Positions 4,271-55,317 of a stretch of DNA of 64,000 bases are shown here, one piece after another. The stretch lies in contig NC_043007.1 in assembly GCF_006345805.1 (NCBI RefSeq), positions 22,382,001 through 22,446,000 of the forward strand, read 5' to 3'. The translations under genes were made by a program, and so were the position numbers. The DNA is from Octopus sinensis (lineage: Eukaryota). Numbering within the stretch: position 1 is the first letter of the stretch; every line of letters starts with the position of its first letter. The notes below the pieces were generated by a model, which saw only the letters and a program-made list of their open reading frames with translations, was not told the DNA's origin and searched no databases.

Positions 4271-4510
4271 GTAGTGGCAACGAGCTGGCAGAAACGTTAG
4301 CACGCCGGGCGAAAATGCTTAGCAGTATTTCGTCTGCCGTTACGTTCTGAGTTCAAATTCCGCCAAGGTTGACTTTGCCTTTCATCCTTTCGGGGTCGAT
4401 AAATTAAGTACCAGTTACACACTGGGATCGATATAATCGACCCAATCCGTGTGTCTGTCTTTGTTTGTCCCCTCTGTGTTTAGCCCCTTGTGGGTAGTAA
4501 AGAAATAGGT
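4270..4510 (+). mobile_element. tRNA-derived CORE-like SINE, family B (about 230 bp)
   Basis: Head gagctggcagaaacgttagc...gttctgagttcaaattccgcc, central gcctttcatcctttcggggtcgat, tail tttagccccttgtgggtagtaaagaaata. Other copies: 10218-10440(-), 17974-18120(-), 27951-28160(+), 40617-40850(+), 50530-50708(+), 55035-55260(+), 56590-56820(+), 58733-58963(+), 59408-59645(-). Probably one of the described Octopus OR/OK SINE families (not verified). Confidence 0.85.
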
Positions 4511-7762: not shown

Positions 7763-9019
7763 ATTGTCTGTATTATAGTGCATTGTTGTACCATTCAAAA
7801 CTTTTTATTCTTTACAAACAATACACAATGCTTCAAGCAAACTACAATACTCTCCGGTAATAAGAGCATTGAGATAGCACAAACCTCTGCCAAGGCAACA
7901 CCAATGTCCTTTCAACGATTAGCCAGAGATGATTTTTAAAATGAGAATATCTGAAATAAACTCGACTGCTCTTAAAAGTTAAGTAAAAAAAAAACCAGAA
8001 TGAATAATCCAGAATCATTGTCCGGTACTAGATTGATCCCAAAATCTAATCAGTTCAATCCAGTCATGAGACCAAAGAAACTTTTGGGGAAAAAATGTGG
8101 ATTATACTCGAGGATTTATGGTAGTTAAGAAGTTAGAGAAAGGGTGCGTATTATACACAAGGTTTAGGTTTTTAAGAGGTATAGTCCCCTAAAATCCCCT
8201 GCGTATTATACTCAAGGGCGGACTATACTCGAGGATTTACGGTATACTCTTTACTCTTTTACTTGTTTCAGTCATTTGACTGCGGCCATGCTGGAGTACC
8301 ACCTTTAGTCGAGCAAATCGACCCCAGGACTTATTCTTTGTAAGCCCAGTACTTATTCTATCGGTTTCTTTTGCCGAACCGCTAAGTGACGGGGACATAA
8401 ACACACCAGCATCAGTTGTCAAGCAATGCTAGGGGGACAAACACAGACACACAAACACACACATGCATATATATATACATATATACGACAGGCTTCTTTC
8501 AGTTTCTGTCTACCAAATCCACTCACAAGGCATTGGTCGGCCCGGGGCTATAGCAGAAGACACTTGCCCAAGATGCCACGCAGTCGGACTGAACCTGGAA
8601 CCATGTGGTTGGTTAGCAAGCTACTTACCACACAGCCACTCCTATAAAGAAAAAAAAAAAATATCTGTTGCAATCTTGTAAGGCTTAATAAAGAATCATA
8701 TCAAGATCTGAAACAGTTATTACAAACAAAAGGAAATAAAATAAAAATAAAATAAATGTATTGTTCTTCATTAGTATTTTATTAGTACAGTTTCATTAGT
8801 TAAATTAGTAGCTTGTCTTGACCTTGGAATTCTCAGGAACATAATTGTTTTAATATTTCATTTGCTAATCTACTTTTGGCTGCAAGTAAAACATAAATAT
8901 AAAATAAAGAAATGCATAAATAAATAAATAAGTAAAAAAAAAAACAGAAATAGATAGATAAATAAGTATAAAAATAACATGGACATTCTTTCAATTACCT
9001 AATTGTTAGTAAATTATCT

Positions 9020-9570: not shown

Positions 9571-10569
9571 TTGGATTTGTTTGTCTTTCTAATGACTACT
9601 TATTGACTCGCTGTCCCACAATGAACAAATGAAAAGGAAATGGCCTCTTTCCTTTCTATTTTAAGCTATTTGCCACATTTAAATTCTGAGTGGAAATTAC
9701 TTCCATTTACAGCTGGCCACTTCACTGCTCAAAATCTGAGTCGAAAACTTACTTGTTCCCTTGGCACGAAAATTTAATCTTGTATTACAAATTTTTCACT
9801 GCTTTCTTTTTGTTTTGTTTGACCCACTGACATCATAACTTGTTTTCTCAGGCACTAGGTTTTACCTTTTCTTTAATTTTTTCTTTTTTTCCCCCCTTAT
9901 CTGAAATCGGTTCATTTTAGGGTGCTTGAATTTTTGAAGCACTAAGTTAAAGCCATATAATATGAAGTGAGCAGATGAGAATCAATGTTGATTCTGGTTA
10001 CTAATTGCATGGGGCAGTTGTTCTAAGCATATTAATTTTTAATTGTGGCTCTCAGAATCGCCAGCTCCTTGCCAAACTGTCCAACCCATGCCAGCATGGA
10101 AAACGGATGTTAAATGATGATGATGTAAGGCACAATTATTAATTTACCAGACAAAATTTCTAGTAGCATTTTTAGTAATGGAAGGCAAGGTTTATGATAT
10201 CTGAGGAGTATCTATTTCTTTACTACCCACAAGGGGCTAAACACAGAGTGGACAAACAAGTACATACAAACGAATTAAGTCGATTATATCGACCCCAGTG
10301 CGTAACTGGTACTTATTTCATCGACCCCGAAAGGATGAAAGGCAAAGTCGACCTCGGCGGAATTTGAACCCAGAACGTAACCGCAGACGAAATACTACTA
10401 AGCATTTCGCTGGCGTGCTAACGATTCTGCCAGCTCTTCGCCCTGATATCTGAGGAATGTCATCTTCTTCCATCATCTCTTTCTTGTTCTTTATGTAGTT
10501 CAGGCTTTTGACAGGCAAAGAAAAAAAACTTGAAGCATAAATGCTATTTACAACTGGTTTATTTACAGG

Positions 10570-22075: not shown

Positions 22076-22675
22076 GTGGTGAGCTGGCAGAATCGTTAGC
22101 ACGCTGGGCGAAATGCGTAGCCGTATTTCGTCTGCCGCTACGTTCTGAGTTCAAATTCCGCCGAGGTCGACTTTGCCTTTCATCCTTTCGAGGTCGATTA
22201 AATAAGTACCAGTTACGCACTGGGGTCGATATAATCGACTTAATCCGTTTGTCTGTCCTTGTTTGTCCCCTCTGTGTTTAGCCCCTTGTGGGTAGTAAAG
22301 AAATAGGTATTTCGTCTGCCGTTATGTTCTGAGTTCAAATTCCGCCGATGTCGACTTTGCCTTTCATCCTTTCGGGGTCGATTAAATAAGTACCAGTTAT
22401 GCACTGGGGTCGATATAATCGACTTAATCCATTTGTCTGTCCTTGTTTGTCCCCTCTGTGTTTAGCCCCTTGTGGGTAGTAAAGAAATAGGTATTTCGTC
22501 TGCCGTTATGTTCTGAGTTCAAATTCCGCCGATGTCGACTTTGCCTTTCATCCTTTTGGGGTTGATTAAATAAGTACCAGTTACGCACTGGGGTCGATAT
22601 AATCGACTTAATCCCTTTGTCTCTCCTTGTTTGTCCCCTCTGTGTTTAGCCCCTTGTGGGTAGTAAAGAAATATA
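22076..22675 (+). repeat. Head-to-tail trimer of family B SINE, 184-bp period
   Basis: The unit start gtatttcgtctgcc recurs at 22123, 22307 and 22491; only the first unit has the 5' head. Confidence 0.95.
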
Positions 22676-24354: not shown

Positions 24355-24806
24355 CAATGAGCAGGCAGAATCATTTGCAGGCCAGGCAAAATGCTTAGTA
24401 GTATTTTGTCCTTCCTGGGGTCAACTTTGTCTTGCATCCGTTTGGGGTTGATAAATTGAGTACTAGGGTCAATGGACTCAACTTAACTAGACCTGGGTAA
24501 GAATACAAAACAGCTCCACCCCTCTGATAAGCCATCTCAAGTCAGTGTGACAGGGTAACTTAATCAAACCAGTATGATCTCACTCAAATTCACAGCTTCC
24601 GCATCAGACTGTGGTCGGTGGAGAGAACATGGTGAGGCCTTCATCCTGCAGTGGACTAAACATAAGCAATTCAATCTAATCCAATATATTATCTATTTGA
24701 CAAAGATTTTAATTAAAAAAAAATCATTTTAATTTAAACATTTTCTTTATTTTTCATTTCAAAATTCTTATTTTTATTTATTCCATTCTATTTTATTTCA
24801 TTTCAG

Positions 24807-24964
24807 CCTGAAAACGAAATATATCTCCAAAGATGGCAGATCTGTTAATTATCAAAAACTTAAGACTTCAGCTGAGCTGAAGAATTTAGAAAAAGAAGTG
24901 CAGAAACTTGTTCATATCAACTTGGAAGACTTATCCATTGATGATCAGAAAGCACTCTTTATTA
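24807..24964 (+). CDS. DUF547-domain protein, internal exon (first identified)
   Basis: Acceptor atttcatttcag; 158 nt, reads LKTKYISKDGRSVNYQKLKTSAELKNLEKEVQKLVHINLEDLSIDDQKALFI(N), matching the DG..V.Y..L / AFxIN motif of DUF547 proteins; donor GTATCCTTTT. Confidence 0.9.
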
Positions 24965-25121
24965 GTATCCTTTTGTTTTCTTTTATTTTCTTTTATTTTT
25001 TTGTCACTGTGAATCCATTTTCAGCCAATCACTGCAATCATCTACAATAATGACACAGGCGATTTGTTGCCATTGTTAAATTATATAATGTTTGATTATA
25101 TATCATTGGTTAGATTTCTGG

Positions 25122-25782
25122 GATCTTTACCTTTTGACCGACAGATTTTTAAAATAATTTTTTGTGACTAAACACTTTCAAACTTCGGACACTGGTAGAA
25201 CGTGTCATATAAAACATCTTTTACTGTTGGCACTTTTGAGAAAAACTTATATTTACGAAGGTATTTCAAGTCAAAGTTCTCATATTTCGGTAATTTCAAC
25301 CAATCAATGACGTGTATTCAACTGAATAAAATTACTGCTGTTGTTTGTCAACAAGAACTTCTGGCGGTGTATATTTCGTTTGTCACTGTTATTTATGACA
25401 ACCCTAACCCTGAAATCCTAACCCTAAAACCCTAATCCTAAAACTCTAACCCTAACTCTAAAACCCTACCCTAAAACCTTAAAACCAGTACAAATGCACA
25501 AATGATGTCATAAATAAGTGACAAATGAAAAATACACCACTGGAAGTTTTTGTTGACAAACAACAGCAGTAATTGTATTCAGCTGAATACTTGTCATTGA
25601 TTGGTTGAAATTACCGAAATAGGACTACTTTAACGTGAAATTACTTTGTAAATATAAGTTTATCTCAAAAATGCTAAGAGTAAAAGATGTTTTACATGAC
25701 ACATTCTACCAGTGTCCGAAGTTTGAAAGTATTTAGTTACAAAAAATTATTTTTTATATCTGTAGGTCAAAAGGTAAAGATC
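25122..25782. mobile_element. Fold-back MITE-like element with about 280-bp inverted arms and a degenerate (CCCTAA)n core
   Basis: gatctttaccttttgacc...tttatgaca (25122-25400) is the imperfect reverse complement of tgtcataaat...ggtcaaaaggtaaagatc (about 25505-25782). Core 25401-25485 reads accctaaccctgaaatcctaaccctaaaaccctaatcc. Confidence 0.88.
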
Positions 25783-27066
25783 TGATTTCTGTAGCTACTC
25801 TAAAGTTCTAAGTGTGATTTAAATACATTTGTTGGATCCAAAGCTTAACTTTCCTTGGTTTGCCAATTGTTCTTAATTAAAATGATTACTTGATAAGCAA
25901 ATCCCATTCAATGTCTTTCAAAACTTTGACATAGGCACAGGAGTGGCTGTGTGGTAAGGAGCTTGCTTACCAGCCACATGGTTCCGGGTTCAGTCCCACT
26001 GTGTGGCAACTTGGGCAAGTGTCTTCTACTATAGCCTGGGGCCCACCAAAGTCTTGTGAGTGGATTTGGTAGACGGAAGCTGAAAGAAGCCCGTCGTATA
26101 TATGTATGTATGTTGTATATATATATATATATAATATATATATATATGTTTGTGTGTCTGTGTTTGTCCCCCAACATCACTTGACAATCAATACTGGTGT
26201 GTTTACATCCCCATAACTTAGCAGTTTGGAAAAAGAGACCAATAGAATAAGTACTAGGCTTACAAAGAATAAGTCCCGGGGTCGATTTGCCCGACTAAAG
26301 GCGGTGCACCAGCATGGCCACAGTCAAATGACTGAAACGAGTAAAAGAGTATATTCTGCACCTGTAATTCATTTACACTTCTCTTATACACATTTGAAAG
26401 GTATATTCATAGTGATAATACATGGGCTTGACTAAATACATCATAAAGAATATAAATTGCTATTACTTACATCAATATTTATAGGAAAGTCTGTACTTTC
26501 CTTTTTTACTTTCACCTCTTTCTCTCTCTTTTCCCATCTATCTAATCTTTGTCTATCTAACTCTATATGTTTTTTGATATTTGTACTTAAAAGCAGCGTG
26601 AAAGTGAAGCTGAGAAAGGCCCAAGAGAGTGTCCATGATTGTATATCTAATAAGCAACGTGGAAACTGTATGCGGCTATTTTAGTTCAAGCTGTTGAACA
26701 CACTACATGTATTGATTCTCACACAGCTCTGCAAGACATTCATTGTGAGATGCCATTCAACTGACATCTGTTGAATATCCTGTTGTAATGACATTGCCGC
26801 GTGTCCCATTAAAAAAAAATCACTAATATATAAATAGGTCTCTTTTATTCTTCTGCGTGAAAACAAACTTGCTAATGATATGAAAGCAAGCCGACTGAAT
26901 TCTGGGTACTGGCTTTTTAAACAAAATGACAAAGGTCTATATCTCATAAAGCAAATGATTTAATGCAAAAATATCTAATGTTCATATCTTAGAGTGCTTC
27001 CTCAAGTTTTGATATGCGAGTATTACTGGTTCAAACTCCACTACAACCTGCTGAGATGCAAGTTAA

Positions 27067-27287
27067 CCCTTTAGTGTTCGCATTATTCTGCCAAAATTAA
27101 TGCTTCTTCATCCACATTGTTTTGAACTAATCAAGCATTATCTTGTAGCTATGAGATTCTGATTAGGTAGCTGTTAATTTTTAAAACGATATTGTGGGGC
27201 TGGTGTGAGAGACCAGATCTGGCCAGTTTGAACATAAAACAGGCAGAATATTTTTGGCCGGATATGGATGGTTTAAATGCTAAAGGG
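27067..27287. mobile_element. piggyBac-type MITE
   Basis: TTAA flanks at 27063-66 and 27288-91; ends CCCTTTAG...CTAAAGGG. An opposite-orientation relative is at 46093-46313. Confidence 0.8.
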
Positions 27288-27731
27288 TTAAACATTACCG
27301 TAAATCCTCACGTATAGTCCACCCTTGAGTATAATACGCAGGGGATTTTTAGGGGGCTCTAACTCTGCAAAACCTAAACCTTGTGTATAATACACATCCC
27401 TTCTCTAACTTGAGTCATGGAGGTCTATATAACGTCCTTGGTTTGTAAAACTGTATACGATAACGTCCTTTATTATTGTTGTATATATAACATAATGCAA
27501 ACATGTAGCTTTTTTGTGCATTTTGTTTGCAGAAAATAAAGAAATAACATTTAATAAATGTTGCTTACTGCAAGTTATGGATGATTCTTTTATGACTTCA
27601 TTGCTTCCAGGTTTTGTAAGCCTAGTACTTATTCAATTGGTCTCTTTTGCCGAACCACTAAGTTATGGGGATGTAAACACACCAGCATTGGTTTCAAGCG
27701 AACTTGGAGGGGGACAAACACAGACACACAA

Positions 27732-27770
<39 letters not shown>

Positions 27771-28309
27771 TATATACGATGGGCTTCTTTTAGTTTCCAT
27801 CTACCAAATCCACTCACAAGGCTTTGGTCAGCTGGGGGCTATAGTAGAAGACACTTGCCCAAGGTGCCATGCAGTCGGACTGAATCCAGCACCATGTGGT
27901 TAGTAAGCAAGCTACTTACCACACAGCCACTCCTATAAATAATATGTAAGCGGCGAGCTGGCAGAAACAGTAGTACATTGGGCGAAATGCTTAGCAGTAC
28001 TTCGTCTGCCGCTATGTTCTGAGTTCAAATTCTGCTGAGGTCGACTTTGCCTTTCATCCTTTCGGGGTTGATCAAATAAGTACCAGTTATGCACTGGGGT
28101 CGATATAATCGACTTAATCTGTTTGTCTGTCCTTATTTGTCCCCTCTGTGTTTAGAAACAAATATGTAGGTGGGTAAATTTACAAATCCGTGTCCAAATT
28201 CAAGAATAAAAAATGCATCCACTTTTTCTATCGTAAAAATAATTGCTGCAAGATGCTAAAAAGTAACTGCTGAAATTTTATAAGTCTTACTTCTTTAACA
28301 TTTAATCAG

Positions 28310-28462
28310 ATTTATTCAATATTCTCACCATTCATGCAATTGCATTGCAACCAAGCCTCCCACAGTCTATACGTAATATCAGCCATTTTTGGGACAGAAC
28401 CGCATACAAAATTGGATCAGAAACCTACACATTGAATGATATTGAACATGGAATTCTGAGGG
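28310..28462 (+). CDS. DUF547-domain protein, internal exon
   Basis: 153 nt, reads (N)LFNILTIHAIALQPSLPQSIRNISHFWDRTAYKIGSETYTLNDIEHGILR(G), containing the N..N.L.IH and Y.L.DIEHGILR DUF547 motifs; donor gtaggt. Confidence 0.92.
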
Positions 28463-29479
28463 GTAGGTCCTTATTCAGATTTGTTGCTTATTGACACCGT
28501 TTCTGTTTTGTTTTGTTGTTGTAGCTTTTATTTTATTTATTTTTATATTTTTTTACTTGTTTTTATTTTTGCTTTTTGGTATGTTTTGATATGTTATTGA
28601 TACAGCATTTAAAGAACTTTTAAAATAATGTGTTTTTGTATTCGAAGGTTCAGGAGTATCTTGAGAACTTTCTTTGGTCAATATTACCCCTGAAAGGGTG
28701 ATCTTGTAAAGCCCCCCCCCCCTTTTTTTTACTAGTGCTGTTTCTCAAAGATAGTGAATCAGCAGACTTGTTAGATCACCAGAAAAAATGCTTTCCAATA
28801 TTTGTTTGGGCCCTTCGTGTTCTCAATTCAAATCCTGATGAGGTCAACGTGCTTTTCATCCAATCCATCGATCCATCAGTCTCCTTCACACACTATTCTT
28901 GGGAGAGTCATTGGAGCAGAGTTGTCAGGAACCTCTCCATAGGGTCACAAAAGAAGCTATTGTCATTGGACATTCTGGCTGAATTCCCAAGAATGACCAA
29001 CTGAAACTATTGGATATTGAATATCTAACCGTCTCATTCTTCATCTACCCTTAGGCCTTCTGTGGGTTGGCTCAGTTTGAAGAATCCGTTTTGCAATTCT
29101 TTACTGCAAAATTCTTATTACATGACTAGCGATGGAGTTACAATATTATTACAAGACTGCAGTTTCAATTCCTGGACTAGTAATACTTTACTTTTACTTG
29201 TTTCAGTCATTTGACTGCGGCCATGCTGGAGCACCGCCTTTAGTCGAGCAAATCGACCCCGGGACTTATTGTTTGTAAGCCCAGTACTTATTCTATCATT
29301 CTCTTTTGCCGAACCGCTAAGTGACGGGGACGTAAACACACCAGCATCGGTTGTCAAGCAATGCTAGGGTGACAAACACAGACATACAAACATACATGAA
29401 AGGTAAAGTTGACCTCAGCAGAATCCTTAATAATAAAAATGCTAATGATTTTCACCTGATTCCTTTTTTTAATTTCCAG

Positions 29480-29595
29480 GCAACAAACCTCCACCAACCC
29501 ACATTGAGCTTCCATTTGGTCCTAAAGATGCTCGCTTAAAGTTTGTCATGAAACCTGACCCCAGAATACATTTTGCTCTTGTTTGGGGTTGTAAA
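29480..29595 (+). CDS. DUF547-domain protein, internal exon
   Basis: Acceptor ttttaatttccag; 116 nt, reads (G)NKPPPTHIELPFGPKDARLKFVMKPDPRIHFALVWGCK with the DPRIHFAL motif; donor gtaagt. Confidence 0.92.
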
Positions 29596-30564
29596 GTAAG
29601 TTAGGTTTTTTATTATATTATATCAATCAATTGTGGGTAACATTTGTTCAGGGTCCCCTATTCTCGGTGATCTAGGTATACTCTGCATACCCATCGAAAA
29701 TGACAAATTCATTATAAACGTTAACTTGACTCGTTAATTTAATCATGAATCTTAATGGAAAACTTTTGTTATATCGTACTCTTTACTCTTTTACTTGTTT
29801 CAGTCATTTGACTGTGGCCATGCTGGAGCACCGCCTTTAGTCGAGCAAATCGACCACAGGACTTATTCTTTGTAAGCCTAGTACTTATTCTATCGGTCTC
29901 TTTTGCCGAACCGCTAAGTTACGGTGACGTAAACACACCAGCATCGGTTGTCAAGCGATGTTGGGGAGACAAACACAAACACACAAACATATACACATAC
30001 ATACACACATATATACATATATACTATGGGCTTCTTTCAGTTTCCGTCTACCAAATCCACTCACAAGGCTTTGGTCAGCCCAAGACTATAATAGAAGACA
30101 CTTGCCCAAGGTGCCATGCAGTGGGACTGAACCCGGAACCATGTGGTTGGTAAGCGAGCTACTTACCTCACAGCCACTCCTGCGCCTATGCTTAAAATTT
30201 GGTGGCATTGGGTGTGGCAGCACACCCAAGTACAACAACCATCATATACCAATACATTTGTTAGGTACCCTATCTATATATTCTATCTTGTTTCGGTCAT
30301 TAGACTGTGGCCATGCTGGGGCACCACCTTGAAAAATGTCAGTTGAACTAAGCTATTCCACAAGCTATTCCGGTCAGCTCCTCAGCTGCTGACATCATAC
30401 CATGCCCGCATACACCACAGACACTACATAGCCATGCATCAGTCTCTCTCCATATCCAACCACTACCTTGCAGGACCTGAATTTAAAACTGAGAAAAAAA
30501 GAACTCTCTACCTCAAACCATCCTACTGACCATCTGGATTATCTTTCAATATTTTGTTTTTCAG

Positions 30565-30743
30565 ACAAGCCCACAAATCAATATATACCAGGGTAAGAAC
30601 CTAGAAAGTTCCTTGGAAGAAGCAATGAAAACATTGTGTGAGCAAGAAGTTTGTATGTTTACAGAAATCAATGAGATATGGCTACCAAGCTTATTTAAAT
30701 GGTACCAGAAAGATTTCGGTAAATCGGACACCGATGCTGTTAG
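30565..30743 (+). CDS. DUF547-domain protein, internal exon
   Basis: Acceptor ttttgtttttcag; 179 nt, reads TSPQINIYQGKNLESSLEEAMKTLCEQEV...IWLPSLFKWYQKDFGKSDTDAV(R) with the LFKWY..DFG motif; donor gtaagc. Confidence 0.92.
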
Positions 30744-31747
30744 GTAAGCATCAAATAATGTTACTAATAAAAAAATTAATTCCATACAACATTCGTGACT
30801 ATCATCATGTATAATACAAGGTTTGTCCTTTTTACTGGACCTCATTCAACATAGCCTTATTGTCCAGTTATATAAGACATAAATCTCACAATATCTACCT
30901 TTTAACCTATTTCTCTTGTCCAACTGCACTACACATTACAGTTTCACTCGGAAAATAATGTCTGTGTGTGTGTGTATATATATATATATAAACTATTTTT
31001 CCTATCACTCACCTTCCTTTCCTGGATATCAGTAACAAAGGCTTCTAGTTGCTTTAACCCAAATTCTTCTTTTGTCATTCCTCTAAATTTTTCTGCTGTC
31101 TCTACCACATCTCAAACCCCTCCTATGCATCAGCAGGTATTTGAATACCTCAGGTCCTACATCAGAGAGGCTGCCTTTTTTTAAAATAAGACACACTATC
31201 ACAAGTTTCATTCATAACGGTTTGATGGAGGACTGGCAAGCCAGTAGGCTGCACCAGGTTCCAATTTGATATGGCAAGGTTTCTACAGCTGGATGCCCTT
31301 CCTAACGCCAACCACTCCGAGAGTGTAGTGGGTGCTTTTTACATGCCAACCAACACAGGGGCCAGTCAGGCGGCACTGGCATTGACCATCCTTGAGTGGT
31401 GCTTTTTACGTGCCACGGGTACTGGCATAGATATCATATCATATATCTTGGTACTGTGGGGATTAATTTCTCCATTAACAGGTCTTTGCTACAGGTTTCA
31501 AATTTTGGCACAAGGCCAGCAATTTCAGGGTTGGAAGTAAGTCGATTACATCAACCCCAGTGCTCAGTTGATACTTATTTTGTTGACCCTATGAAAAACC
31601 AAATCGACCTTGGCAGAATTTCAACTCAAAACATAAAGATGGCTGAAATGCTGTTGAGCTGCTAAGCCTTTTGCCTGGCATGCTAGCAATTCTGCCAGCT
31701 TGCTGCCTTTAATAAATCTTTGATATTGTGTTAAATGCTTACTAGTA

Positions 31748-32270
31748 CCGTAAATCCTCAAGTATAATCCGCATTTTTTCCCCAAAATTTAATGGTCAAA
31801 ATCCTTTGTGCGTACTATATACGAGGTTAAAAATAAAAAAATATTTTCTAGGTAATGTCTGAGTCTCTATTTGCTGTCCGGCAATGTTTATTCAGACACA
31901 TTTTGTGATGTCAGGCGCGAAAATACCTTAAGCTAAGCCTGAAAGCAATGAAGTCATAAAAGAATCATCCATAACTTGCAGGAAGCAACATTTATTAAAA
32001 TAAAAGTATTCAGAACACAGAATAACATGTAACAAAAACAATTTGAAAACATATTTACATTCCCATATAACAGTTAAGAACATCACCATTATTTTATTAT
32101 GCATGCATGGAAGTGTTTGTTCGACTAGGTGCTGCTGGCTTAATTACGCATGACTCAAGTTAGAGAAGGAGTGCTTATTATACACAAGGTTTAGGTTTCT
32201 CAGAGGTACAGCCCCCTAAAAATCCCCTGCGTATTATACTCAAGGGCGGACTATACTCGAAGATTTCCGG
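31748..32270. mobile_element. Tc1/mariner-superfamily (pogo/Tc2-like) MITE
   Basis: TIRs ccgtaaatcctcaagtata / tatactcgaagatttccgg flanked by TA. A second full copy is at 35267-35788, with partials at about 8090-8242 and 27298-27560. Confidence 0.75.
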
Positions 32271-32959
32271 TATGTAAATTACTAGCTTCTCTAAAACAAC
32301 TAGATCTGATGTACCCAAAGTGCCATGCCATGACACAGAAGCTGAAACCATGTGATTAGAAATCATCTATTTCAACCAAATTTACTTCAAATCATTCCCT
32401 ACTATTTTAAAATAATGAGCATCGTTTAGGATAATGTGGTCCTGAAAATAAGATGATCATAGAGGCAATGCTTTTGATCACCAGTTCACTTGATTGCATT
32501 TGACCTGGGGTTAAACAGTGAACAGGAGGAATTACAACTGTGTTTCGTGGTCTGCTACCACAACAGCTCTTTTATAGGATCCAGTTAGCTCAAGATATCA
32601 TCAGGAGGAACCATGTCCGGTTTCGGTCCCTACTCCTCTACTGTTTTAGACGTGGCGGGGCCCCCACTTTCGGAGGTGTCTTCAGCTCTGGTGTTGGGTG
32701 CATGTCTTCTTTCTTCTTCTTTCTTCTGTTCCCTGGCCTCTTCGATGTATCGTCAGCGAGTGTCAGCCGGTGACTGACTAACTTGTCAAATTTTTCCCTT
32801 TAAATACCTGCCGTTAGGCTCCAGCAGGCAGCCCCAGCAACTTGTCATGTGACACTGTCTCACCTTAACTGACTAGTGAAGGCACGTAGTCTTAGCCTGC
32901 ACATTCTCTAAGCGACCGTCACCTGTCAGTCAGCGAAGCTGATTCAGTGTCAGCTTGTC

Positions 32960-33330
32960 TCACCTAGTGATGTTATTTCCCGCCAGCATGTTATGACTTT
33001 CAACCCATTTTTGGTCTTCCCGCTTCAACCATATATAGAAGCTGGCTTTTACAACCACCTCCTGTACTCTCCTTATTAGTTTTCGCAGCTCGGAGCTAGA
33101 AAAAACAAATCCTCTTTTGAGTAGCATTGTCATTTTCCTTTCAATGAAGCCTCTAGCCCCCACTGCCTGGTGGTAATACTCGACATTCCATCCCTGTTCT
33201 CTGCATTTTTCGATTAGTTTTTCGTACCTCTTCTCCTTTTGTTCCTCTTGTGTTGATTGAAGAGGTGAAATAATGACATCATAAATATAAACTTCCAAAT
33301 TGCTGTTCTCTACTATTATGCTTGCAAACG
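32960..33330 (-). mobile_element. HERO/R2-group non-LTR retrotransposon, C-terminal restriction-like endonuclease fragment
   Basis: ORF reads EEQKEKRYEKLIEKCREQGWNVEYYHQAVGARGFI...VVKASFYIWLKREDQKW, matching the K..Y..L...CRE.GW...VG.RGF...AS..IWLKR..W pattern of HERO-type RLE domains. Confidence 0.75.
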
Positions 33331-33365
33331 TCAGGCTCTGAATTACTTTCTCTTTCTAATTTCAG

Positions 33366-33501
33366 ATCTGTCATGCCGTACTTGTCAAAGGAAAAGAAGA
33401 ACCGTGCAGAGCTTTTGTTGCTTGCTTTAGACAGAATTGGTAATGTGAACTTGAAGCTGACACCCTATGAATGGCAATTAAACAACTCTGGAACTGTATA
33501 A
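33366..33501 (+). CDS. DUF547-domain protein, terminal coding exon
   Basis: Acceptor tttctctttctaattttcag; reads (R)SVMPYLSKEKKNRAELLLLALDRIGNVNLKLTPYEWQLNNSGTV* with the C-terminal Y.W.LN motif; phase fits the previous exon. Confidence 0.88.
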
Positions 33502-34360
33502 CACACACACACACGTACGCATGCATGAACACCAACACATCACATATAAATATGAACACATCATTGATATGCTTTCAGAAATTCTGAGACACTCTCAGAA
33601 ACACTGGTACTCTGACACTTTCTGACATATGCATATTCTTCATGCAAGAATGGATTACAATTATTTAACAGAACATCCTCAAAAACCTGTTCGTTTATAG
33701 CTTTATATATTTTTGTAATTTCAATACTTACTAGTCTTCAACTTGAACCAGCTAATCAGCTAATGTCTGCTTCAAAGCATACTCTTTCACTCTTTTACTT
33801 GTTTCAGTCATTTGACTGCGGCCATGCTGGAGCAACGCCTTTAATCGAGCAACTCGACCCCGGGACTTATTCTTTTTGTAAGCCCAGTACTTATTCTATC
33901 AGTCTCTTTTGCCGAACCGCTAAGTAACGGGGACATAAACACACCAGCATCGGTTGTCAAGCAATGCCAGGGGGACAAACACAGACACACAAACACACAC
34001 ACACACATATATATACATATATACGACAGGCTTCTTTCAGTTTCCGTCTACCAAATCCATTCACAAGGCATTGGTCGGCCCGGGGCTATAGCTGAAGACA
34101 CTTGCCCAAGATGCCATGCAGTGGGACTGAACCCGAAACCATGTGGTTGGTAAACAAGCTCCTTACCACACAGCCACTCCTGCACCTATGGCCACTCCTG
34201 CGCCTATTTCCACTCCTGCGCCTATCTAAGCATGTCTACGGCAGAACGAATTTCCTTCATTGAATTGCCAGAATTGTTCTGGTGGTCAGACAGAAGGATT
34301 TACAATATTTAGTCTGGCTTTTTACGTTCTGAGTTTAAATTCTATGAGATCAACTTTGCC

Positions 34361-38313: not shown

Positions 38314-41032
38314 AACAACAAACTGCGTCATTACTATTTTTTAATCTATAAATTAAAATTACCAAAGCCAAGCTTACTTGGAAAACCAAATGAAAAATTA
38401 CAAGTCTGGCAGTGTTTTTCAGGGCCTAATAATCTCAGACAAATCTAATCAACGTTTAATTGTATCTCAAGAGGGTCATTAAGCTAATAATAAATACATG
38501 CACTGGTTCTGTCATATGTATATTATTGTTATTAGACAGTTGGTTAAGGCAGTGAGCTGGCAGAATCATTAACATGCCAGATGCAAAATATTCTGAGAAA
38601 AAGTTTTCTTTCACCACAACAAAACACACACACATGCATGCTATGTTCTGAGTTCAAATTCCACTGAGGTCGACTTTGCCTTTCATCCTTTCAGGGTCGA
38701 TAAATGAAGTACCAGTGAAAGAAGGAAAAAAATAATAATGATAATAATAATAATAAATAATATAATAACAATAATAAATATAATAATAATAATAAATATA
38801 ATAATAATAATAATAATAATTAATAATAATAATAATAATAGTAAATAATAATAATTAATAATAATAAATAATAATTGTTTCAAATTTTGCCACAAGGGCA
38901 GCAATTTTGGGGGAGGGGATAAGTCCATTATATCAACCCTAGTGTTCAAATGGTATTTATTTTATCAACCTTGAAAGGTAACATCAACCTTGGCGGAATT
39001 TGAACTCAGAACGTAGCGACGAGCAAAATAGCACTAAGCATTTCATCCAGCACACTAACAATTCTGCCAGCTCGAATAATCGTTGTCATCATTCCTTAGC
39101 ATCCATTTACCATGTCGGCCTGGGTTGGACGGTTTGACCAGGGCTGGCAAGCTGTGGATCTGCACCATATTCCAGTTTGATTTGGCTTGGTTTCTAAGGT
39201 TGGATGCCTTTCCTAATGCCAACCACTTTACAGGGTGTGCTGAATCCTTTAACATGGCACTGGCACAAGGTTCTTGCTGGCCAATCCTCTTTACCAGTGG
39301 ATGCAGTCTTTACACTTCTGCCATGGAGGACAGATCTTCTTGAGTACAGCAAGGCTGTATCTTGGTCCTTTGGCATCTGACCCGAAAGGGTCAGCATTCT
39401 AAGGTCATCCTTCAATAAATAATAATAATAATAATAGTGGGTGCTTTTACGTAAAGGCATGTAAAAGCACCCACTATACTCTCGGAGTGATTGGTGTTAG
39501 GAAGGGCATCCAGCTGTAGAAACTCTGCCAGATCAGATTGGAGCCTGGTGCAGCCATCTGGTTCGTCAGACCTCAGTCAAATCATCCAACCCATGCTAGC
39601 ATGGAAAGCGGATGTTAAATGATGATTAATAATAACAATAATAATAATAATAATAATAAAGAAATGAAATGGAACCAGTATGTGTTTATTATTGGCACAA
39701 TGACCCCCCCCCCCGCCTCCCAAGATACAACAAAATATGTTTCAACACACAAGTTCTCATCAAGAATCTTGTGAACCAAATACAAAAACTAATCACTAAT
39801 ATTATCCACAAACCACGAGTAACCGCATTGAGCATCATGTCTGAGAAATTTGAAATAAGGAAACTACAGGAAAAAAATTCTATCAGAAATTAGGCAAAAC
39901 TGAAACTCGAGATCAAGGATTTAAGAGATAGAAATGAAATTAGAATTAATTAATTTATTATGTTTGATAATCTGAAGTGTCCAGCTGAGTATTTCCTTAT
40001 AGCAATAAAGCCTAGCCACATTTTGAGCTGTGCAGCTGAGCTTGCTCAAGCAACAGTGAAATTTGTTTTTTGTTATACTCTTTTACTTGTTTCAGTCATT
40101 TGACTGCGGCCATGCTGGAGCACCGCCTTTAGTCGAGCAACTCGACCCCGGGACTTATTCTTTTTGTAAGCCCAATACTTATTCTATCGGTCTCTTTTGC
40201 CGAACCGCTAAGTAACGGGGACGTAAACACACCAGTATCGGTTGTCAAGCAATGCTAGGGGGACAAACACAGACACACAAACACACACACACATATATAT
40301 ATATATATACATATATACAATGGGCTTCTTTCAGTTTCCGTCTACCAAATCCACTCACAAGGCTTTGGTCGGCCCGAGGCTATAGTAGAAGACAATTGCC
40401 CAAGGTGCCATGCAGTGGGACTGAACCCTGAACCATGTGGTTGGTAAGGAAGCTACTTACCACACAGCCACTCCTGCGCCTATGTTTTTTTCTTGTGAGA
40501 ACTTTTTTTTGTCTTGGCTAATTTTTTATTTCAGTGCTGCAAACTAGAAAAATTCCTCATTCTATAATGCCTTATCTTATTATAATTGTTGTTGTTATCA
40601 TTATTATTATGATTAAGGTGGCGAGCTGGCACAATCGTTAGCATGCCAGGCAAAATGCTTAGCAGTATTTCGTCTGCCGCTACGTTCTGAGTTCAAACTC
40701 CGCCGAGGTCGACTTTGCCTTTCATCCTTTCGGGGTCGATTAAATAAGTACCAGTTACGTACTGGGGTCAATATAATCGACTTAATCCGTTTGTCTGTCC
40801 TTGTTTGTCCTCTCTGTGTTTAGCCCCTTGTGGGTAGTAAAGAAATAGGTATTTTGCCCATCGCTACTCAGTTCAAATTCCGCCAAGGTCAACTTTGCCT
40901 TTCCTCCTTTTGGGATTGATAAAAATAAATGCCAGTTGAGTACTGGGGGTCAATGTAATTGACTTACCCCACTTGCCCTTTAATTATTGGCCTTGTGCCA
41001 GAAATTATTCTTATTATTGTTGTTGTCTCAAG

Positions 41033-42426: not shown

Positions 42427-44387
42427 ATGGGCTTCTTTCAGTTCCTGTCAAATCCACACACAAGGCTTTGGTTGGCCCAAGGCTATAGTAGAAGACAGTT
42501 GCCCAAGGTGCCATGCAGTGGGACTGAACCCGGAACCATGTGGTTGGTTAGCAAGCTACTTACCACACAGCCATTTAAATTTATTTTACTATTCAAGAGA
42601 TTTCAAATGTTATCCCTGCCCTCCCCTACTTTCAAATTCTGTGAATTACTTTCTATATTCTGTTCAGATTTAATCAGTAGGGTCTTGGTATTTTTTTCGC
42701 TAAGGTTAAATTTGAGGAAGGAATCACTTGAAGTTATGTAGTCTTGGGTCAGTCCTGATTGAGCAATTCCTTAGCATGTAGGTTATGGACCAAATGACAA
42801 GAAGGTGCTAGAGTGTGTTAACTTACTGTGTATTATCTCAAAAGATTTCTGGACATTACTGTCTTGAGTCCTAGGGCCCACGGGACCAATTCCCCAGTTC
42901 TCATGGCATATAAATGAAATCACAACATTCCCCCTGGATGGGATGCCAGTCCATTGCAGGGTTGCTCATTTACAGCCGAGTGGACTGGGGCAACGTAAAA
43001 TGAAGTGTTTTTGCTCAAGAACACAATGTACCACCCAGTCCGGAAATTGAAACTACAATTTTGTGATTGCTAGTGCAACACACTAACCGCAAGACTACAT
43101 GTCTTCACATGAAAGATCTGTAGGCAAATGTAACTAATCATTAATTAATCTTGTGTTCTGGAGATATTCTTTTGTAGATTTATATTGCTTAATATATAAA
43201 AGTAAGGTTGTGTGTCTGTCTACTCCGATTTAGATTCCTAACTACTCCCACATTTTGCGGTTTGCAGTTAACCAAAACCGGGTATCTTATAGTCGTGATT
43301 CATATCGAGCCCTTCTGGTATTAGCGTGAGTCTACGATTTTTAAAATAATTTACCATCATTTTTTTCCATTTTAATGCATTTTTTTAAGGGAAGTAACTC
43401 TCTAAAAATGTCTACGATGAGTCAACGATTTTAAAAAAAATTTACCATCATATTTTTCCATTTTAATGCATTTTTTGCTATTTTTTTACTATAACTCTCT
43501 AAAAATGCTTTATAGTTATTTCCCTTACAAACCCGAGCAACGCTGGGCGATACTGCTAGTTGCTTAATAAAGCAAGCTAAGTATTGTTTGGATGAAGTAG
43601 GGGCTTTTTGTTATGTTTTTGTGTACAGTACATAAGCAGTTTTGGGTTGCCTTCTGATTTGATGGCATTCTTTCATTTGTGGAGTAAAACCTTTTCTGTC
43701 TGTTTCAATTCCATGTGAAGAATAAATGCCAGAGTTGTTTATCTTTCATCTGCTTGATACTACAGAGATGGAAGTCTAACACTTGCCTTATGAACCCTTG
43801 TGGTGTGGTAAAGAATTCAGTTTGTAAACTGGGGATGGGATTAATTCTGGCATTAATACAAAAAAGAAACCCCCTCGCAAAAAAAAAAAAAAAAAACTAA
43901 TTCACACTTACTTATTTATCAGCCACTCATCTTTGCCATCTTAAGCAATAATTTATGCATTCATTATCTTAATTGCTCCTGCCATTTTCTAAGTAAAATA
44001 CAAGATGTCTACAAAAGTTCTCTAGCGGTAGTGCCCCAGCATGGCCGCGGCCTTCGGGCTAAAACATTTTAAAGGATTTAAGGATTCATAATTTGTTGAT
44101 GGCCATATGTCTGCTGAACCAGGTCTGACCTGGACTAAAGATTAGTTCCAAAACTGACCGGCAGATTCACTGAGGAAAGTGTTTTTTGAACTTTTTATTA
44201 CTTTAGCACTGTTGCCTTATAAATGGTTTTCTAGACTTCTTGTGGCTCAGTTATATTATTTGTATATATTTATAAAAGTGTGGAGGCTGTTTTGTATCCT
44301 TTTTATAAATCTTTTTGTTATTCATTTTTTTAAAATTCTACCACAATCTTACATAGCTTTATAATTCTTGATATTTTCACTTGCTTT

Positions 44388-44772: not shown

Positions 44773-46332
44773 TTAAACATCTTTGTTATTTTATAATGAT
44801 CTATATTTGTCTCTTGTACATATTAAATTTATCCTGTTTCGTTTTTTTTTTTATATATTTTTATTGTATTTCATTTCACATTTGAATTTTGTAAATAAAT
44901 TCTTCTTTCTGTTCAACTGTGATATCAAAAGTTTAAAAGCATACTCTTTTACTTGTTTCAGTCATTTGACTGCGGTCATGCTGGAGTACCGCCTTTAGTC
45001 GAAAACAAATCGACTCCGGGACTTATTCTTTGTAAGCCCAGTACTTATTCTATCGGTCTCTTTTGCGGAACCGCTAAGTGACGGGGACATAAACACACCA
45101 GCATCGGTTGTCAAGCAATGCTAGGGGGACAAACACAGTCACACACACACACACACACACATATATATACATATATACGTTGGGCTTCTTTGAGTTTCCG
45201 TCTACCAAATCCACTCACAAGGCTTTGGCTGGCCCAAGGCTATAGTAGAAGACACTTGCCCAAGGTGCCACACAGTGGGACTGAACCCAGAACCATGTGG
45301 TTGGTAAGCAAGCTACTTACCACACAGCCACTCCTGCACCTATATCTGAATCTCTTGCTACTTTATGTTCATTTTGCTAAATCATCGAATCTGTTTGTTT
45401 CTGTCTTTTACACTGGTTTTCTGCATTGTACTGTGGCCATTCTGGGGCAACACCATGAAGAGTTTTTAGTAAATCAAATCAATCCTTGTACTTAGTTCTT
45501 TTTTTGTTTTTGTTTTAAAGCCTGTTGCCTACTCTGTTGGTCTCTTTTGCCAAACCGCTAAGTTATAAAGACATTAACAAACCAACACTAATTGTCTAAG
45601 CGGGGTGGGAGAACATTTCTAACACATATCTGACACACTCACACATGCAACAGGCTTCCACACAGTTTCCGTCTATAAATTCACTCATAAAGCATTGGTC
45701 AGCCTAGAGCTATAGTAGAAGACACTTGCCCAAGGGGTCAGGCACTGGGGACTGAACCCCAAACCACACCATTGCAAATAAAGCTTTATAATCACACAGC
45801 CAAGGCTGTGCCTATATTGTGTTAAAAAAAAAAATTAAAACCAAATTAAATAGGAACTGAAATCCCTAGAATTTCATATTGTGATTCCTTTGAAAGGAAT
45901 AGCAAATCAAAGACTGATTACCAATATCATTAAGTGGTTGGCATTAGGAAGGGCATCCAGCTGTAGAAACTCTGCCAAATCAAGACTGGAACCTGGTGCA
46001 GCCATCTGGTTCGCCAGACCTCAGTCAAATCGTCCAACCCATGCTAGCATGGAAAGCGAACGTTAAACGATGATGATGATGATGATGATTAACCCTTTAG
46101 TATCTAAACAGGCCATATCCGGCCCAAATATGCTTCCTGTTTCATGCTCTAACTAGTCAGATCCAACCTTTCACACCTACCCTTCAATGCCATTCTAGAA
46201 ATCTACAATCTCATCATGAAAACTTTAAAGCTACAAAATAAAGCATGATTAATTATAAACAATGTCAATGAAAAAACATTACATTTTGACAAAATAATCT
46301 GAATACGAAAGGGTTAAAGTAAAATGCTTTAC

Positions 46333-49560: not shown

Positions 49561-50754
49561 AAGCCAGGAACTTTACTGCACCCCCTTGTGTATATATGTG
49601 TCTGTATATATAAGCATGGTTATGGATTAGAAGCTCACCTTGCAACCAATGGTCTCAGGTTCAGTCCCACTGTATGACCTCTTGGGTATTACTCTTTACT
49701 CTTTTACTCTTTTACTTGTTTCAGTCATTTGACTGCGGCCATGCTGGAGCACCGCCTTTAGTCGAGCAAATCAACCCCGGGACTTATTCTTTGTAAGCCC
49801 AGTACTTATTCTATCGGCCTTTTTTGCCGAACCGCTAAGTGACGGGGACGTAAACACACCAGCATTGGTTGTCAAGCAATGCTAGGGGGACAAACACAGA
49901 CACATACACATAAATATACATATATACGACAGGCTTCTTTCAGTTTCCGTCTACCAAATCCACTCACAAGGCATTGGTCGGCCCGGGGCTATAGCAGAAG
50001 ACACTTGCCCAACATGCCACGCAGTGGGACTGAACCCGGAACCATGTGATTGGTTAGTAAGCTACTTACCACACAGCCACTCCTGCGCCTACTATGGCCC
50101 TCAGCTGACTTATATTATGTGAGTGAGCTTGGTAAATGGAAACAGCGTGGAAGTATGTCATGTGTATGTATGTGTGTGCGTGTGTATAGCCTTGTGTCTA
50201 TTTGTCCTTCATCACCACTTGGCAACTGGTGTTGGATTGTTTACTCTCTTGTGACATAGTGGTTCAACAAAAGAGACAAGTGTGTGTGTTCCTTATTGAG
50301 CCACGCCTGGCTCCAAAGGGCCGGTTTCCTGGTTTCCTTGGCGTATAGGTTCCCCACTTGGACGGGAAGCCGGTTCGTCACAGGTGAGCTGCAAGATGCA
50401 GGAGGAAAGAGTGAGAGAAAGTTGTGGCGAAAGAGTCAGCAGAAGTTTGCCATTACCTTCTGCCGGAGCCGTGTGGAGCTTATGTGATTTGCTCATAAAC
50501 ACACACATCGCCTGGTCTGGGTAGTAAAGAAATACGTATTTCGTCTGCCGCTTCGTTCTGAGTTCGAATTCCACCGAGGTCGACTTTGCCTTTCATCCTT
50601 TCGGGTTCGATTAAATAAATACCAGTTACGCACTGGGGTCGATATAATCGACTTAATCCCTTTGTTTGTCCCCTCTATGTTTAGCCCTTGTGGGCAATAA
50701 AGAAATAATAAACACTATCTTTATCCTTTAGTTGATCTACCTATTTGCACTTAC

Positions 50755-54295: not shown

Positions 54296-54720
54296 CCGGG
54301 ATTGCGGATCAGCATTCTTCACTGCCACCGCATCGATCGGGTTCCTACAGCCGGTCTTCGTCATTGCCTGAATCTCCGGCCCCTCCCTTTGGTGCTTCTA
54401 CAACGGCGCTTAAAGTGGTTTGGTCATGTGGCCCGGCGTCCAGAGGGTGAGCTGATTCACGATGTCCTCCCCCCACCTCCACTTCCCAGCTGGCGCAGAT
54501 GCGCAGGCGGGCAGCTGGAGACCTGGGCAACGACGATAAAGGAGGACCTCTCCGAACTCCCAGGTCCGCAGGTGGTCGGTCTGCGCAGATGGAACCGCGA
54601 ATGGCTCGCTATCTCCAGTGACCTCACACAAGACTGTCGAGTGTGGGTCACCATGGTTCATGATGCTGTTAGGACCAGAGAAGAAGCCACCCTGGGTGAA
54701 CGCCGTCACAAGTTCAAGTC
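54296..54720 (+). mobile_element. RTE-clade LINE 3' fragment
   Basis: QRRLKWFGHVARRPEGELIHDVL...WRRCAGGQLETWATTIKEDL...LTQDCRVW matches the RTE C-terminal RL.WFGHV.R / W..T.K.DL / QDR..W motifs. Confidence 0.88.
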
Positions 54721-55317
54721 AGTACTCACTCAGAGTGAGAGAGAGGGAAAGAGAAAGACTCAGTTTCATTGCTAGAAGAGCTAAAGGTTTACTTGACATT
54801 TTCCATCCACCCCATCCTCACTCTGGCTGGTATGGCATTGGAACTCTCACCTGCACCACTGGTGCTTAAGTGTTAGGGAAACCATCAACTACTTCTATGG
54901 AACCTTCTGAGCACTTAAAGGAGTTTCACACAGTAACATAGCTAGGAAAGGGTGAGGGAGCAGTCTGCCCCAAACGAAGCTATTATGGGGAAGGGTGACA
55001 CTTTTGGGCCTGCTGTATACTGTAATCCTGTATAGGCAGTGAGCTGGCAGAATCGTTAGCACGTGAAATGCTTGGCGGTATTTCGGCTGCCGTTACGTTG
55101 TGAATTCAAATTCCGCCGAGGTTGACTTTGCCTTTCATCCTTTCGGGGTTGATTAAATAAGTACCAGCTACGCACTAGGGTCGGTGTAATCAACTTAATC
55201 CCTTTGTCTGTCCTTGTTTGTCCCCTCTGTGTTTAGCCCCTTGTGGGTAGTAAAGAAATATGTATAGGGGGCTGTGGGCATTAGGGGAGGGGTTGCAGGT
55301 GGCACACACTCTAGCTA

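What the first reader, a model, noticed from the sequence alone, without database searches (positions are those of the whole stretch)
24965..28309. Minor-spliceosome (U12) intron in the DUF547 gene
The donor GTATCCTTT and branch TTCTTTAAC positioned just upstream of the AG match the U12 consensus (RTATCCTTT; TTCCTTRAC, one mismatch). The intron splits the codon of the conserved Asn of the FIN motif. U12 introns are rare, typically rate-limiting and concentrated in ancient genes, and are little studied in cephalopods.
Basis: partly seen in the sequence, partly recalled or inferred. Interest (0 to 1): 0.7.

Follow-up and report, generated by a model that had tools for sequence, protein, structure and literature searches.

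The report
Ancient U12 intron in octopus DUF547 gene
The 3.3-kb intron at 24965-28309 of an Octopus sinensis DUF547 gene is very probably a minor-spliceosome (U12-type) intron, kept at the same codon from corals to fish and molluscs; it is a well-supported but ordinary new example of a known intron class.

Summary
GTATCCTTT sits at 24965, TTCTTTAAC at 28291-28299 with its branch A 11 nt from the AG at 28308-28309. Joining 24964 to 28310 gives ...KALFI|NLFNILTIHA, phase 1, inside the Asn codon A|AT. The joined exons are 100% identical to the RefSeq protein of Octopus sinensis LOC115217066 (DUF547, Pfam E=1e-30).

The donor motif alone is at chance level in the window (2 found, 1.8 expected). 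What matters is that it coincides with a homology-fixed junction and a correctly spaced branch site (about 2e-6 per junction), and that it is conserved.

Exact spliced mapping of orthologs shows an intron at the same codon and phase, with U12-like donor and branch motifs, in Argonauta, Acanthosepion, Haliotis, Crassostrea, Owenia, Ptychodera, Branchiostoma, Amia and the coral Porites. All 46 other introns in these genes look U2-type.

In the bdelloid rotifer Adineta the same position holds a 58-nt U2-type intron. In a tardigrade the intron is gone. Both fit published minor-intron loss in those clades.

The intron therefore predates the cnidarian-bilaterian split. It is a new member of a known kind. 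Octopus sinensis has already been surveyed genome-wide for minor introns, so interest is modest.

The parts
24807..24964 (+). Coding exon 2 of the DUF547 gene (residues 45-97 plus the first base of Asn98). The acceptor AG is at 24805-24806. Exon 1 (residues 1-44) is not in the window.
   Evidence: Exact match to P0001 (XP_029642511.1) in the spliced mapping.
24965..28309 (+). U12-type (minor-spliceosome) GT-AG intron, 3345 nt, phase 1, inside the Asn98 codon (A|AT).
   Evidence: Orthologous U12-like introns in nine other species.
24965..24973 (+). U12-type 5' splice site GTATCCTTT. It matches GTATCCTT at 8 of 8 positions and the U2 consensus CAG|GTRAGT at only 3 of 9. The -1 base is A, fixed by the Asn codon.
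   Evidence: Tied for the top score among 128k window positions with a PWM built only from the nine other species.
28291..28299 (+). U12-type branch-point sequence TTCTTTAAC (7 of 8 to TCCTTRAC). [quoted passage not shown]
   Evidence: Rank 49 of about 128k positions with the leave-one-out PWM. It is the weakest of the ten orthologous branch sites.
28308..28309 (+). 3' splice site AG, preceded by the 8-nt spacer ATTTAATC. There is no room for a separate polypyrimidine tract.
28310..28462 (+). Coding exon 3 (the rest of Asn98 through the first base of Gly149); core of the DUF547 domain.
28463..29479 (+). U2-type intron 3 (GTAGGT...TTTTTTTAATTTCCAG), phase 1.
29480..29595 (+). Coding exon 4 (residues 149-187).
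29596..30564 (+). U2-type intron 4 (GTAAGT...TTTTGTTTTTCAG), phase 0.
30565..30743 (+). Coding exon 5 (residues 188-247).
30744..33365 (+). U2-type intron 5 (GTAAGC...CTCTTTCTAATTTCAG), phase 2.
33366..33501 (+). Last coding exon (residues 247-291 plus the stop codon).
25048..25050 (+). First in-frame stop codon if the U12 intron is retained. It follows 27 intron-encoded codons after the split codon (read-through SILLFSFIFFYFFVTVNPFSANHCNHLQ*) and would truncate the protein before most of the DUF547 domain.

Best explanation
The interval 24965-28309 is a GT-AG U12-type intron of Octopus sinensis LOC115217066, a 291-aa DUF547 protein. I infer the following mechanism from what is established for this intron class. 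The U11/U12 di-snRNP recognises the 5' splice site GUAUCCUUU and the branch sequence UUCUUUAAC together. The branch A, 11 nt upstream of the AG, attacks the donor, and U4atac/U6atac.U5 complete catalysis. This joins A(24964) to AT(28310-28311) and restores the invariant Asn of the F-x-I-N-x-[YF]-N motif. The single departure from the branch consensus (C to U at the second C) would still pair with the corresponding G of U12 snRNA as a G-U wobble. That point is an inference from the known U12 snRNA sequence and was not tested. The intron is ancient: it was already U12-type at this codon in the cnidarian-bilaterian ancestor. Only about 10 nt at the 5' end and about 20 nt at the 3' end are constrained. 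The rest of the octopus intron is filled with interspersed repeats. Because the -1 base is the first base of an invariant Asn codon (AAY), it cannot become the G that favours U1 binding without changing Asn to Asp. This may have slowed conversion to U2-type; this is an inference that follows the class-conversion argument of PMC7367187.
For: Shown by tool results:
- The motifs and coordinates are as reported.
- The joined exons hit Pfam DUF547 at E=1e-30 and are 100% identical to XP_029642511.1. All residues 45-291 map exactly, with GT-AG junctions.
- The same junction appears in protein models of O. vulgaris and O. bimaculoides.
- An intron at the same codon and phase has a GTATC[CT]T donor and a [CT][CT]TTRA[CT] branch motif 9-17 nt from the AG in Argonauta, Acanthosepion, Haliotis, Crassostrea, Owenia, Ptychodera, Branchiostoma, Amia and Porites.
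- In a uniform scoring of 56 introns, the ten orthologous introns score 7-8 of 8 on both U12 motifs and 3-5 of 9 on the U2 donor consensus. None of the other 46 introns exceeds 6 of 8 on either U12 motif.
- Silent exon positions (-2, -5) and intron positions +10 onward vary freely, while +1 to +5 and +7 are invariant.
- Adineta vaga has a 58-nt U2-type intron at the same site, and Paramacrobiotus has none. This matches the published extreme loss of minor introns in bdelloids and their absence in tardigrades (PMC10639083).
- The joint chance of donor plus branch motif at a fixed junction is about 2e-6.
- No in-frame U2-like donor lies nearby.
Against: There is no direct RNA evidence from octopus. 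The junction rests on annotation models and protein homology, and intronIC could not be run. The octopus branch site is the weakest of the ten, being the only one with T at the second C, and ranks 49th in the window rather than first. The Amia and Porites donors read GTATCT rather than GTATCC, so their U12 status is probable rather than certain. Pyrimidine content at -20 to -4 (0.71) does not by itself separate this intron from the U2 introns. Dependence on the minor spliceosome is inferred and was not measured.
Confidence: 0.93

Rival explanations
1. The intron uses the same GT and AG but is removed by the major (U2-type) spliceosome, or by either spliceosome. On this reading the U12-like motifs are relics in octopus.
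For: The termini are GT-AG. The octopus branch motif is degenerate (TTCTTTAAC) and T-rich, and upstream CTTAC (28287-28291) could serve as a U2-type branch site. Conversion from U12 to U2 at this very position did happen in Adineta. Dual-spliceosome introns are reported in the literature (PMC10853781 abstract).
Against: The donor matches the U1-complementary consensus at only 3 of 9 positions, with A at -1 and C at +5 and +6. The donor is a perfect 9 of 9 U12 match and is identical in the three cephalopods sampled. Only 8 nt, ATTTAATC, lie between the branch motif and the AG, which leaves no polypyrimidine tract. Molluscs keep many minor introns (PMC10639083).
Confidence: 0.05
2. The resemblance is chance or an annotation artefact, and the true exon junction lies elsewhere.
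For: RTATCCTTT occurs at chance frequency in the window, 2 found against 1.79 expected, and the copy at 44294 has no coding context.
Against: The junction restores an uninterrupted, gap-free DUF547 alignment through an Asn conserved in 113 of 115 homologs. The joint chance is about 2e-6. The same motifs sit at the same codon in nine other species. A 1209-nt Logan contig encodes the full 292-aa ortholog of a decapodiform-like cephalopod with FFINLFN uninterrupted, so it is probably a spliced transcript.
Confidence: 0.02

Closest known systems
U12-type (minor-spliceosome) GT-AG introns, as catalogued by U12DB, SpliceRack and intronIC/IAOD (PMC1557818, PMC7367187)
   Same: It has the /GTATCCTTT donor and a TCCTTRAC-like branch site 11 nt from the AG. 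It has no separate polypyrimidine tract, a poor U1 match, a non-zero phase and deep positional conservation.
   Different: The host gene (a stand-alone DUF547 protein) did not turn up together with U12 in the searchable literature. I found no mammalian ortholog among the best 120 hits, so the intron would be missed by human-centred catalogues. The branch site carries a C-to-T change that none of the nine other orthologs has.
Minor introns of Octopus sinensis and other molluscs in the pan-eukaryotic survey of Larue and Roy 2023 (PMC10639083)
   Same: The survey covers the same species and the same intron class. Its picture of mollusc enrichment, extreme loss in bdelloids and absence in tardigrades is mirrored by this single intron.
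   Different: The survey reports aggregate numbers. This intron is not described individually in the text available to me, and I could not check whether it is in their data files.
Minor-to-major intron conversion (Burge et al. class-conversion hypothesis, as extended in PMC7367187)
   Same: Adineta vaga keeps the intron position and phase but has GTAATT...TTTTTAG, a textbook converted intron.
   Different: The conversion happened even though the -1 base stayed A and the intron is phase 1, the less favoured case under that hypothesis.

Membership tests
U12-type (minor) spliceosomal intron | 5' splice site matching /RTATCCTT, with GT or AT termini | tested here: met
   GTATCCTTT at 24965-24973, 8 of 8. 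Tied top score in the window with the leave-one-out PWM.
U12-type (minor) spliceosomal intron | Branch-point sequence resembling TCCTTRAC, located roughly 8-20 nt (optimum about 10-15) upstream of the 3' splice site | tested here: met
   TCTTTAAC at 28292-28299, 7 of 8, with the branch A 11 nt from the intron end. Only 0.8% of AG sites in the window have such a motif at that distance.
U12-type (minor) spliceosomal intron | No distinct polypyrimidine tract between the branch site and the AG | tested here: met
   Only ATTTAATC separates the motif from the AG. The crude pyrimidine fraction at -20 to -4 (0.71) is uninformative because the branch motif itself is T-rich.
U12-type (minor) spliceosomal intron | Poor complementarity of the donor to U1 snRNA (U2-type consensus CAG|GTRAGT) | tested here: met
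   3 of 9 matches. The other three introns of the gene in the window score 6-7 of 9.
U12-type (minor) spliceosomal intron | Same class kept at the orthologous position in species that have a minor spliceosome | tested here: met
   Ten of ten species from Cephalopoda, Gastropoda, Bivalvia, Annelida, Hemichordata, Cephalochordata, Actinopterygii and Anthozoa. The intron is converted or lost in a bdelloid rotifer and a tardigrade.
U12-type (minor) spliceosomal intron | The junction is actually used in mRNA | tested here: inconclusive
   Protein models of three Octopus species use it. A short Logan contig of a related cephalopod encodes the uninterrupted motif. No octopus RNA-seq reads could be inspected.
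U12-type (minor) spliceosomal intron | Splicing depends on U11, U12, U4atac and U6atac snRNPs | not testable with these tools
   This needs a knock-down, an inhibition experiment or CLIP. The window holds no snRNA gene (no Rfam hits).
U12-type (minor) spliceosomal intron | High U12 probability from the standard classifier (intronIC SVM) | not testable with these tools
   Neither intronIC nor its PWMs are available here. Consensus-match counts and a leave-one-out PWM were used as substitutes.
DUF547 (PF04784) protein family (host gene) | Significant match to the Pfam DUF547 profile over its full length | tested here: met
   E=9.8e-31, 106.8 bits against a cut-off of 27, profile positions 2-122 of 125.

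The most novel reading that the evidence does not exclude
The intron may have stayed U12-type for more than 600 million years because slow or regulated minor splicing is used to gate DUF547 expression, rather than merely because conversion is hard. Retention puts a stop codon 27 intron-encoded codons past the junction. If so, this intron would be a natural, mammal-independent reporter of minor-spliceosome activity in cephalopods and other marine invertebrates. It could be older still, shared with plant or protist DUF547 genes and so of early eukaryotic age.
Probability: 0.15. Interest if true: 0.45.

Novelty: new member of a known kind. Interest (0 to 1): 0.25.

Why it matters
This is a clean example of a minor intron whose whole history can be read at one codon. 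It is U12-type from coral to bowfin and octopus, converted to U2-type in a bdelloid rotifer, and deleted in a tardigrade. Because I found no mammalian ortholog among the best hits, it adds a marker that human-centred U12 catalogues would not contain. It also offers a convenient test intron for minor-spliceosome function in cephalopods. It does not change what is known about the mechanism or distribution of minor splicing.

Tried and rejected
1. I tested whether the donor motif alone is significant. It is not: 2 copies against 1.79 expected. The second GTATCCTTT at 44294 and the ATATCCTT at 58112 lie in non-coding, AT-rich or microsatellite sequence and are not exon ends.

2. I looked for exon 1 (residues 1-44) in the window and found no 5-mer match in any frame. 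It lies upstream of the window, so intron 1 is longer than 24.8 kb.

3. Rfam at gathering thresholds gave no hit anywhere in the window. There is therefore no snRNA or intron-hosted known RNA.

4. Literature searches for DUF547 with U12, and for minor intron with cephalopod, returned nothing. The supplement of PMC10639083 held as text has no per-species data, so the minor-intron count for O. sinensis could not be retrieved.

5. SpliceRack and intronIC PWMs are not in the paper texts, so no true intronIC-style score was computed.

6. The Acropora look-up returned only an intron-less transcript contig. Porites was used instead for the cnidarian test.

7. A Pfam scan of six stray ORFs, in and around the gene and elsewhere in the window, gave nothing above the cut-off.

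8. My first spliced-mapping script failed at most junctions because BLAST HSPs ran into the introns. It was replaced by exact-block trimming.

Full report
**Observation.** The sequence reads ...CTCTTTATTA|GTATCCTTTTGTTT at 24964/24965 and ...CTTACTTCTTTAACATTTAATCAG|ATTTATTCAAT at 28309/28310. The As of the branch motif lie 11-12 nt from the last intron base. Joining the flanks gives KALFI|NLFNILTIHAIALQP, with the Asn codon split A|AT (phase 1).

**The gene.** The joined exons match Pfam DUF547 (E=9.8e-31). They are 100% identical to XP_029642511.1, 'uncharacterized protein LOC115217066' of Octopus sinensis. Exact spliced mapping places residues 45-291 on five exons: 24807-24964, 28310-28462, 29480-29595, 30565-30743 and 33366-33501. 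Exon 1 is not in the window. Four residues that differ in O. vulgaris identify the window as O. sinensis. The O. vulgaris and O. bimaculoides protein models carry the same junction. The split Asn is N in 113 of 115 aligned homologs, including bacterial ones.

**Is it more than chance?** The donor motif alone is not. RTATCCTTT occurs twice in the window against 1.79 expected, and the other copy (44294) is in non-coding sequence. The coincidence, however, is significant:
- GTATCCTT is found at 2 of 7751 GT dinucleotides.
- A branch motif matching at least 7 of 8 positions, 8-20 nt upstream, is found at 59 of 7484 AG dinucleotides.
- The joint frequency is therefore about 2e-6 for a junction whose position is fixed independently by protein homology.
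- With PWMs built only from the nine other species, the octopus donor ties for the best of about 128,000 window positions and the branch site ranks 49th.

**Comparative test.** I fetched the genomic loci of orthologs and mapped each protein exactly (mapping). An intron lies in the same Asn codon, phase 1, in all of the following:

| Species | Donor | Branch motif |
|---|---|---|
| Argonauta hians | GTATCCTTTG | CCCTTAAC |
| Acanthosepion pharaonis | GTATCCTTTT | ACCTTGAC |
| Haliotis rufescens | GTATCCTACA | ACCTTGAC |
| Crassostrea virginica | GTATCCTTTG | TTCCTTAAC |
| Owenia fusiformis | GTATCCTTTA | TTTCTTAAC |
| Ptychodera flava | GTATCCTTTA | TTCCTTGAT |
| Branchiostoma lanceolatum | GTATCCTTCA | ATCCTTAAC |
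| Amia ocellicauda | GTATCTTTTA | GCCTTAAC |
| Porites lutea (coral) | GTATCTTTTA | TTCCTTAAT |

In a uniform scoring of all 56 introns:
- The ten orthologous introns score 7-8 of 8 against GTATCCTT and 7-8 of 8 against TCCTTRAC, with the branch A 9-17 nt from the AG. They score only 3-5 of 9 against the U2 donor consensus.
- None of the other 46 introns exceeds 6 of 8 on either U12 motif. Most have G at -1, GTRAGT-like donors and pyrimidine tracts.
- Synonymous exon positions next to the donor, and intron positions from +10 onward, vary freely, while +1 to +5 and +7 are invariant. This is the signature of selection on the intronic signal itself.

**Loss and conversion.** Adineta vaga keeps an intron at the same codon and phase, but it is 58 nt long and reads GTAATTAT...TTTCGTTTTTAG, which is U2-type. 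Paramacrobiotus metropolitanus has no intron there. Larue and Roy (PMC10639083) report extreme minor-intron loss in bdelloid rotifers and no minor introns in tardigrades. They also report relative enrichment in molluscs, and Octopus sinensis is among their analysed species. The single-locus history fits that genome-wide picture exactly.

**Mechanism (inferred from the established biology of the class).** The U11/U12 di-snRNP binds the donor and branch sequence cooperatively, and the A at about 28298 is the branch nucleophile. The short 8-nt spacer to the AG, without a polypyrimidine tract, is typical of these introns.

The one mismatch to the branch consensus (C to T at the second C) would still allow a G-U wobble with U12 snRNA. 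This rests on my knowledge of the conserved U12 branch-recognition sequence and was not tested. It remains the weakest branch site of the ten orthologs.

If the intron is retained, translation stops at 25048-25050, after 27 intron-encoded codons past the split codon and before most of the DUF547 domain. No strong in-frame U2-type donor lies nearby that could substitute.

The -1 base is the first base of an invariant AAY codon and so cannot become G without an Asn-to-Asp change. Under the class-conversion argument of PMC7367187 this should hinder conversion to U2-type, and it offers a neutral explanation for the long persistence of the intron.

**Intron body.** Outside the two ends, the octopus intron is built from interspersed repeats:
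- an inverted pair at 25122-25400 and 25506-25782 (88.5% identical);
- two opposed copies of an element of about 430 bp (25921-26353 and 27612-27935) that occurs at least 15 times in the window;
- an element of about 200 bp (27947-28155) that also occurs in tandem elsewhere in the window.

This explains a length of 3345 nt against 600 nt in Argonauta. No Rfam family is present anywhere in the window.

**Comparison and verdict.** This is a standard GT-AG U12-type intron, and all sequence-level membership criteria are met. Direct RNA evidence and dependence on the minor spliceosome remain untested. No searchable paper links DUF547 with U12, and I found no mammalian ortholog among the best 120 hits, so the intron is probably missing from human-centred catalogues. 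It may, however, already sit in the data files of the 2023 survey.

I rate it a new member of a known kind, with confidence 0.93 that it is U12-type. Interest is 0.25: a specialist would find it a neat, well-behaved example rather than a surprise.

Noticed in passing
window 25921-26353, 27612-27935, and e.g. 276-690, 2093-2499, 8252-8651, 29784-30200, 33789-34190, 40074-40485, 44941-45346, 49705-50091, 60402-60807, 62107-62489: An interspersed element of about 430 bp, in both orientations and 80-88% identical between copies, occurs at least 15 times in the 64-kb window. It looks like a SINE-like repeat, often with a (CA)n or (TA)n tail. Two opposed copies sit inside the U12 intron.
   Followed up: partly
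window 27947-28155; tandem arrays at 22078-22649 and 62722-63475; also 4281-4483, 10237-10436, 40620-40823, 55033-55236, 56588-56795, 59439-59647: A second repeat family of about 160-200 bp (84-94% identical) is found both dispersed and in short tandem arrays. Its spurious ORF reads '...HNWYLFNRPRKDERQSRPRRNLNSE...'.
   Followed up: partly
window 25122-25400 and 25506-25782: A 279-bp inverted repeat pair (88.5% identical), separated by about 105 bp, lies inside the U12 intron. It looks like a MITE or foldback element and could form a long hairpin in the pre-mRNA.
   Followed up: no
window 44294-44302 (+) and 58112-58119 (+): There is a second perfect GTATCCTTT and an ATATCCTT. Neither has a coding context, and both serve as chance-level controls for the donor motif. 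All three RTATCCTT copies are on the + strand.
   Followed up: yes
window 54302-54775 (+): A 157-aa ORF contains '...RLKWFGHVARRPEGELIHDVL...', which resembles the C-terminal end of non-LTR retrotransposon reverse-transcriptase ORFs. This is from my own recollection and was not tested. It is probably a LINE fragment.
   Followed up: no
window 32960-33298 (-), inside the last intron of the DUF547 gene: A 112-aa ORF of non-repetitive composition (MEVYIYDVIISPLQSTQEEQKEKRYEKLIEKCREQGWNVEYYHQAVGARGFIERK...) has no Pfam hit. It may be a fragment of a mobile-element protein.
   Followed up: partly
P0123 (O. bimaculoides isoform X1, 325 aa) against window exon 6: O. bimaculoides has an annotated isoform that diverges right after the exon 5/6 junction (after ...DTDAVR) and replaces the conserved C-terminus. 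This suggests alternative 3' exon use or read-through at the last, U2-type intron rather than at the U12 intron.
   Followed up: no
L005 1-739 and L006 1-354 (Owenia, Ptychodera): A RabGAP-TBC gene lies head-to-head immediately upstream of the DUF547 gene in both the annelid and the hemichordate. This is conserved microsynteny that could not be checked in octopus because exon 1 lies outside the window.
   Followed up: no
L003 13267-13296 and 13690 onward (Branchiostoma lanceolatum): The first 10 codons of exon 2 (RMKGEHMVAG) occur twice, about 420 nt apart. This is a partial local duplication of the exon start inside intron 1.
   Followed up: no
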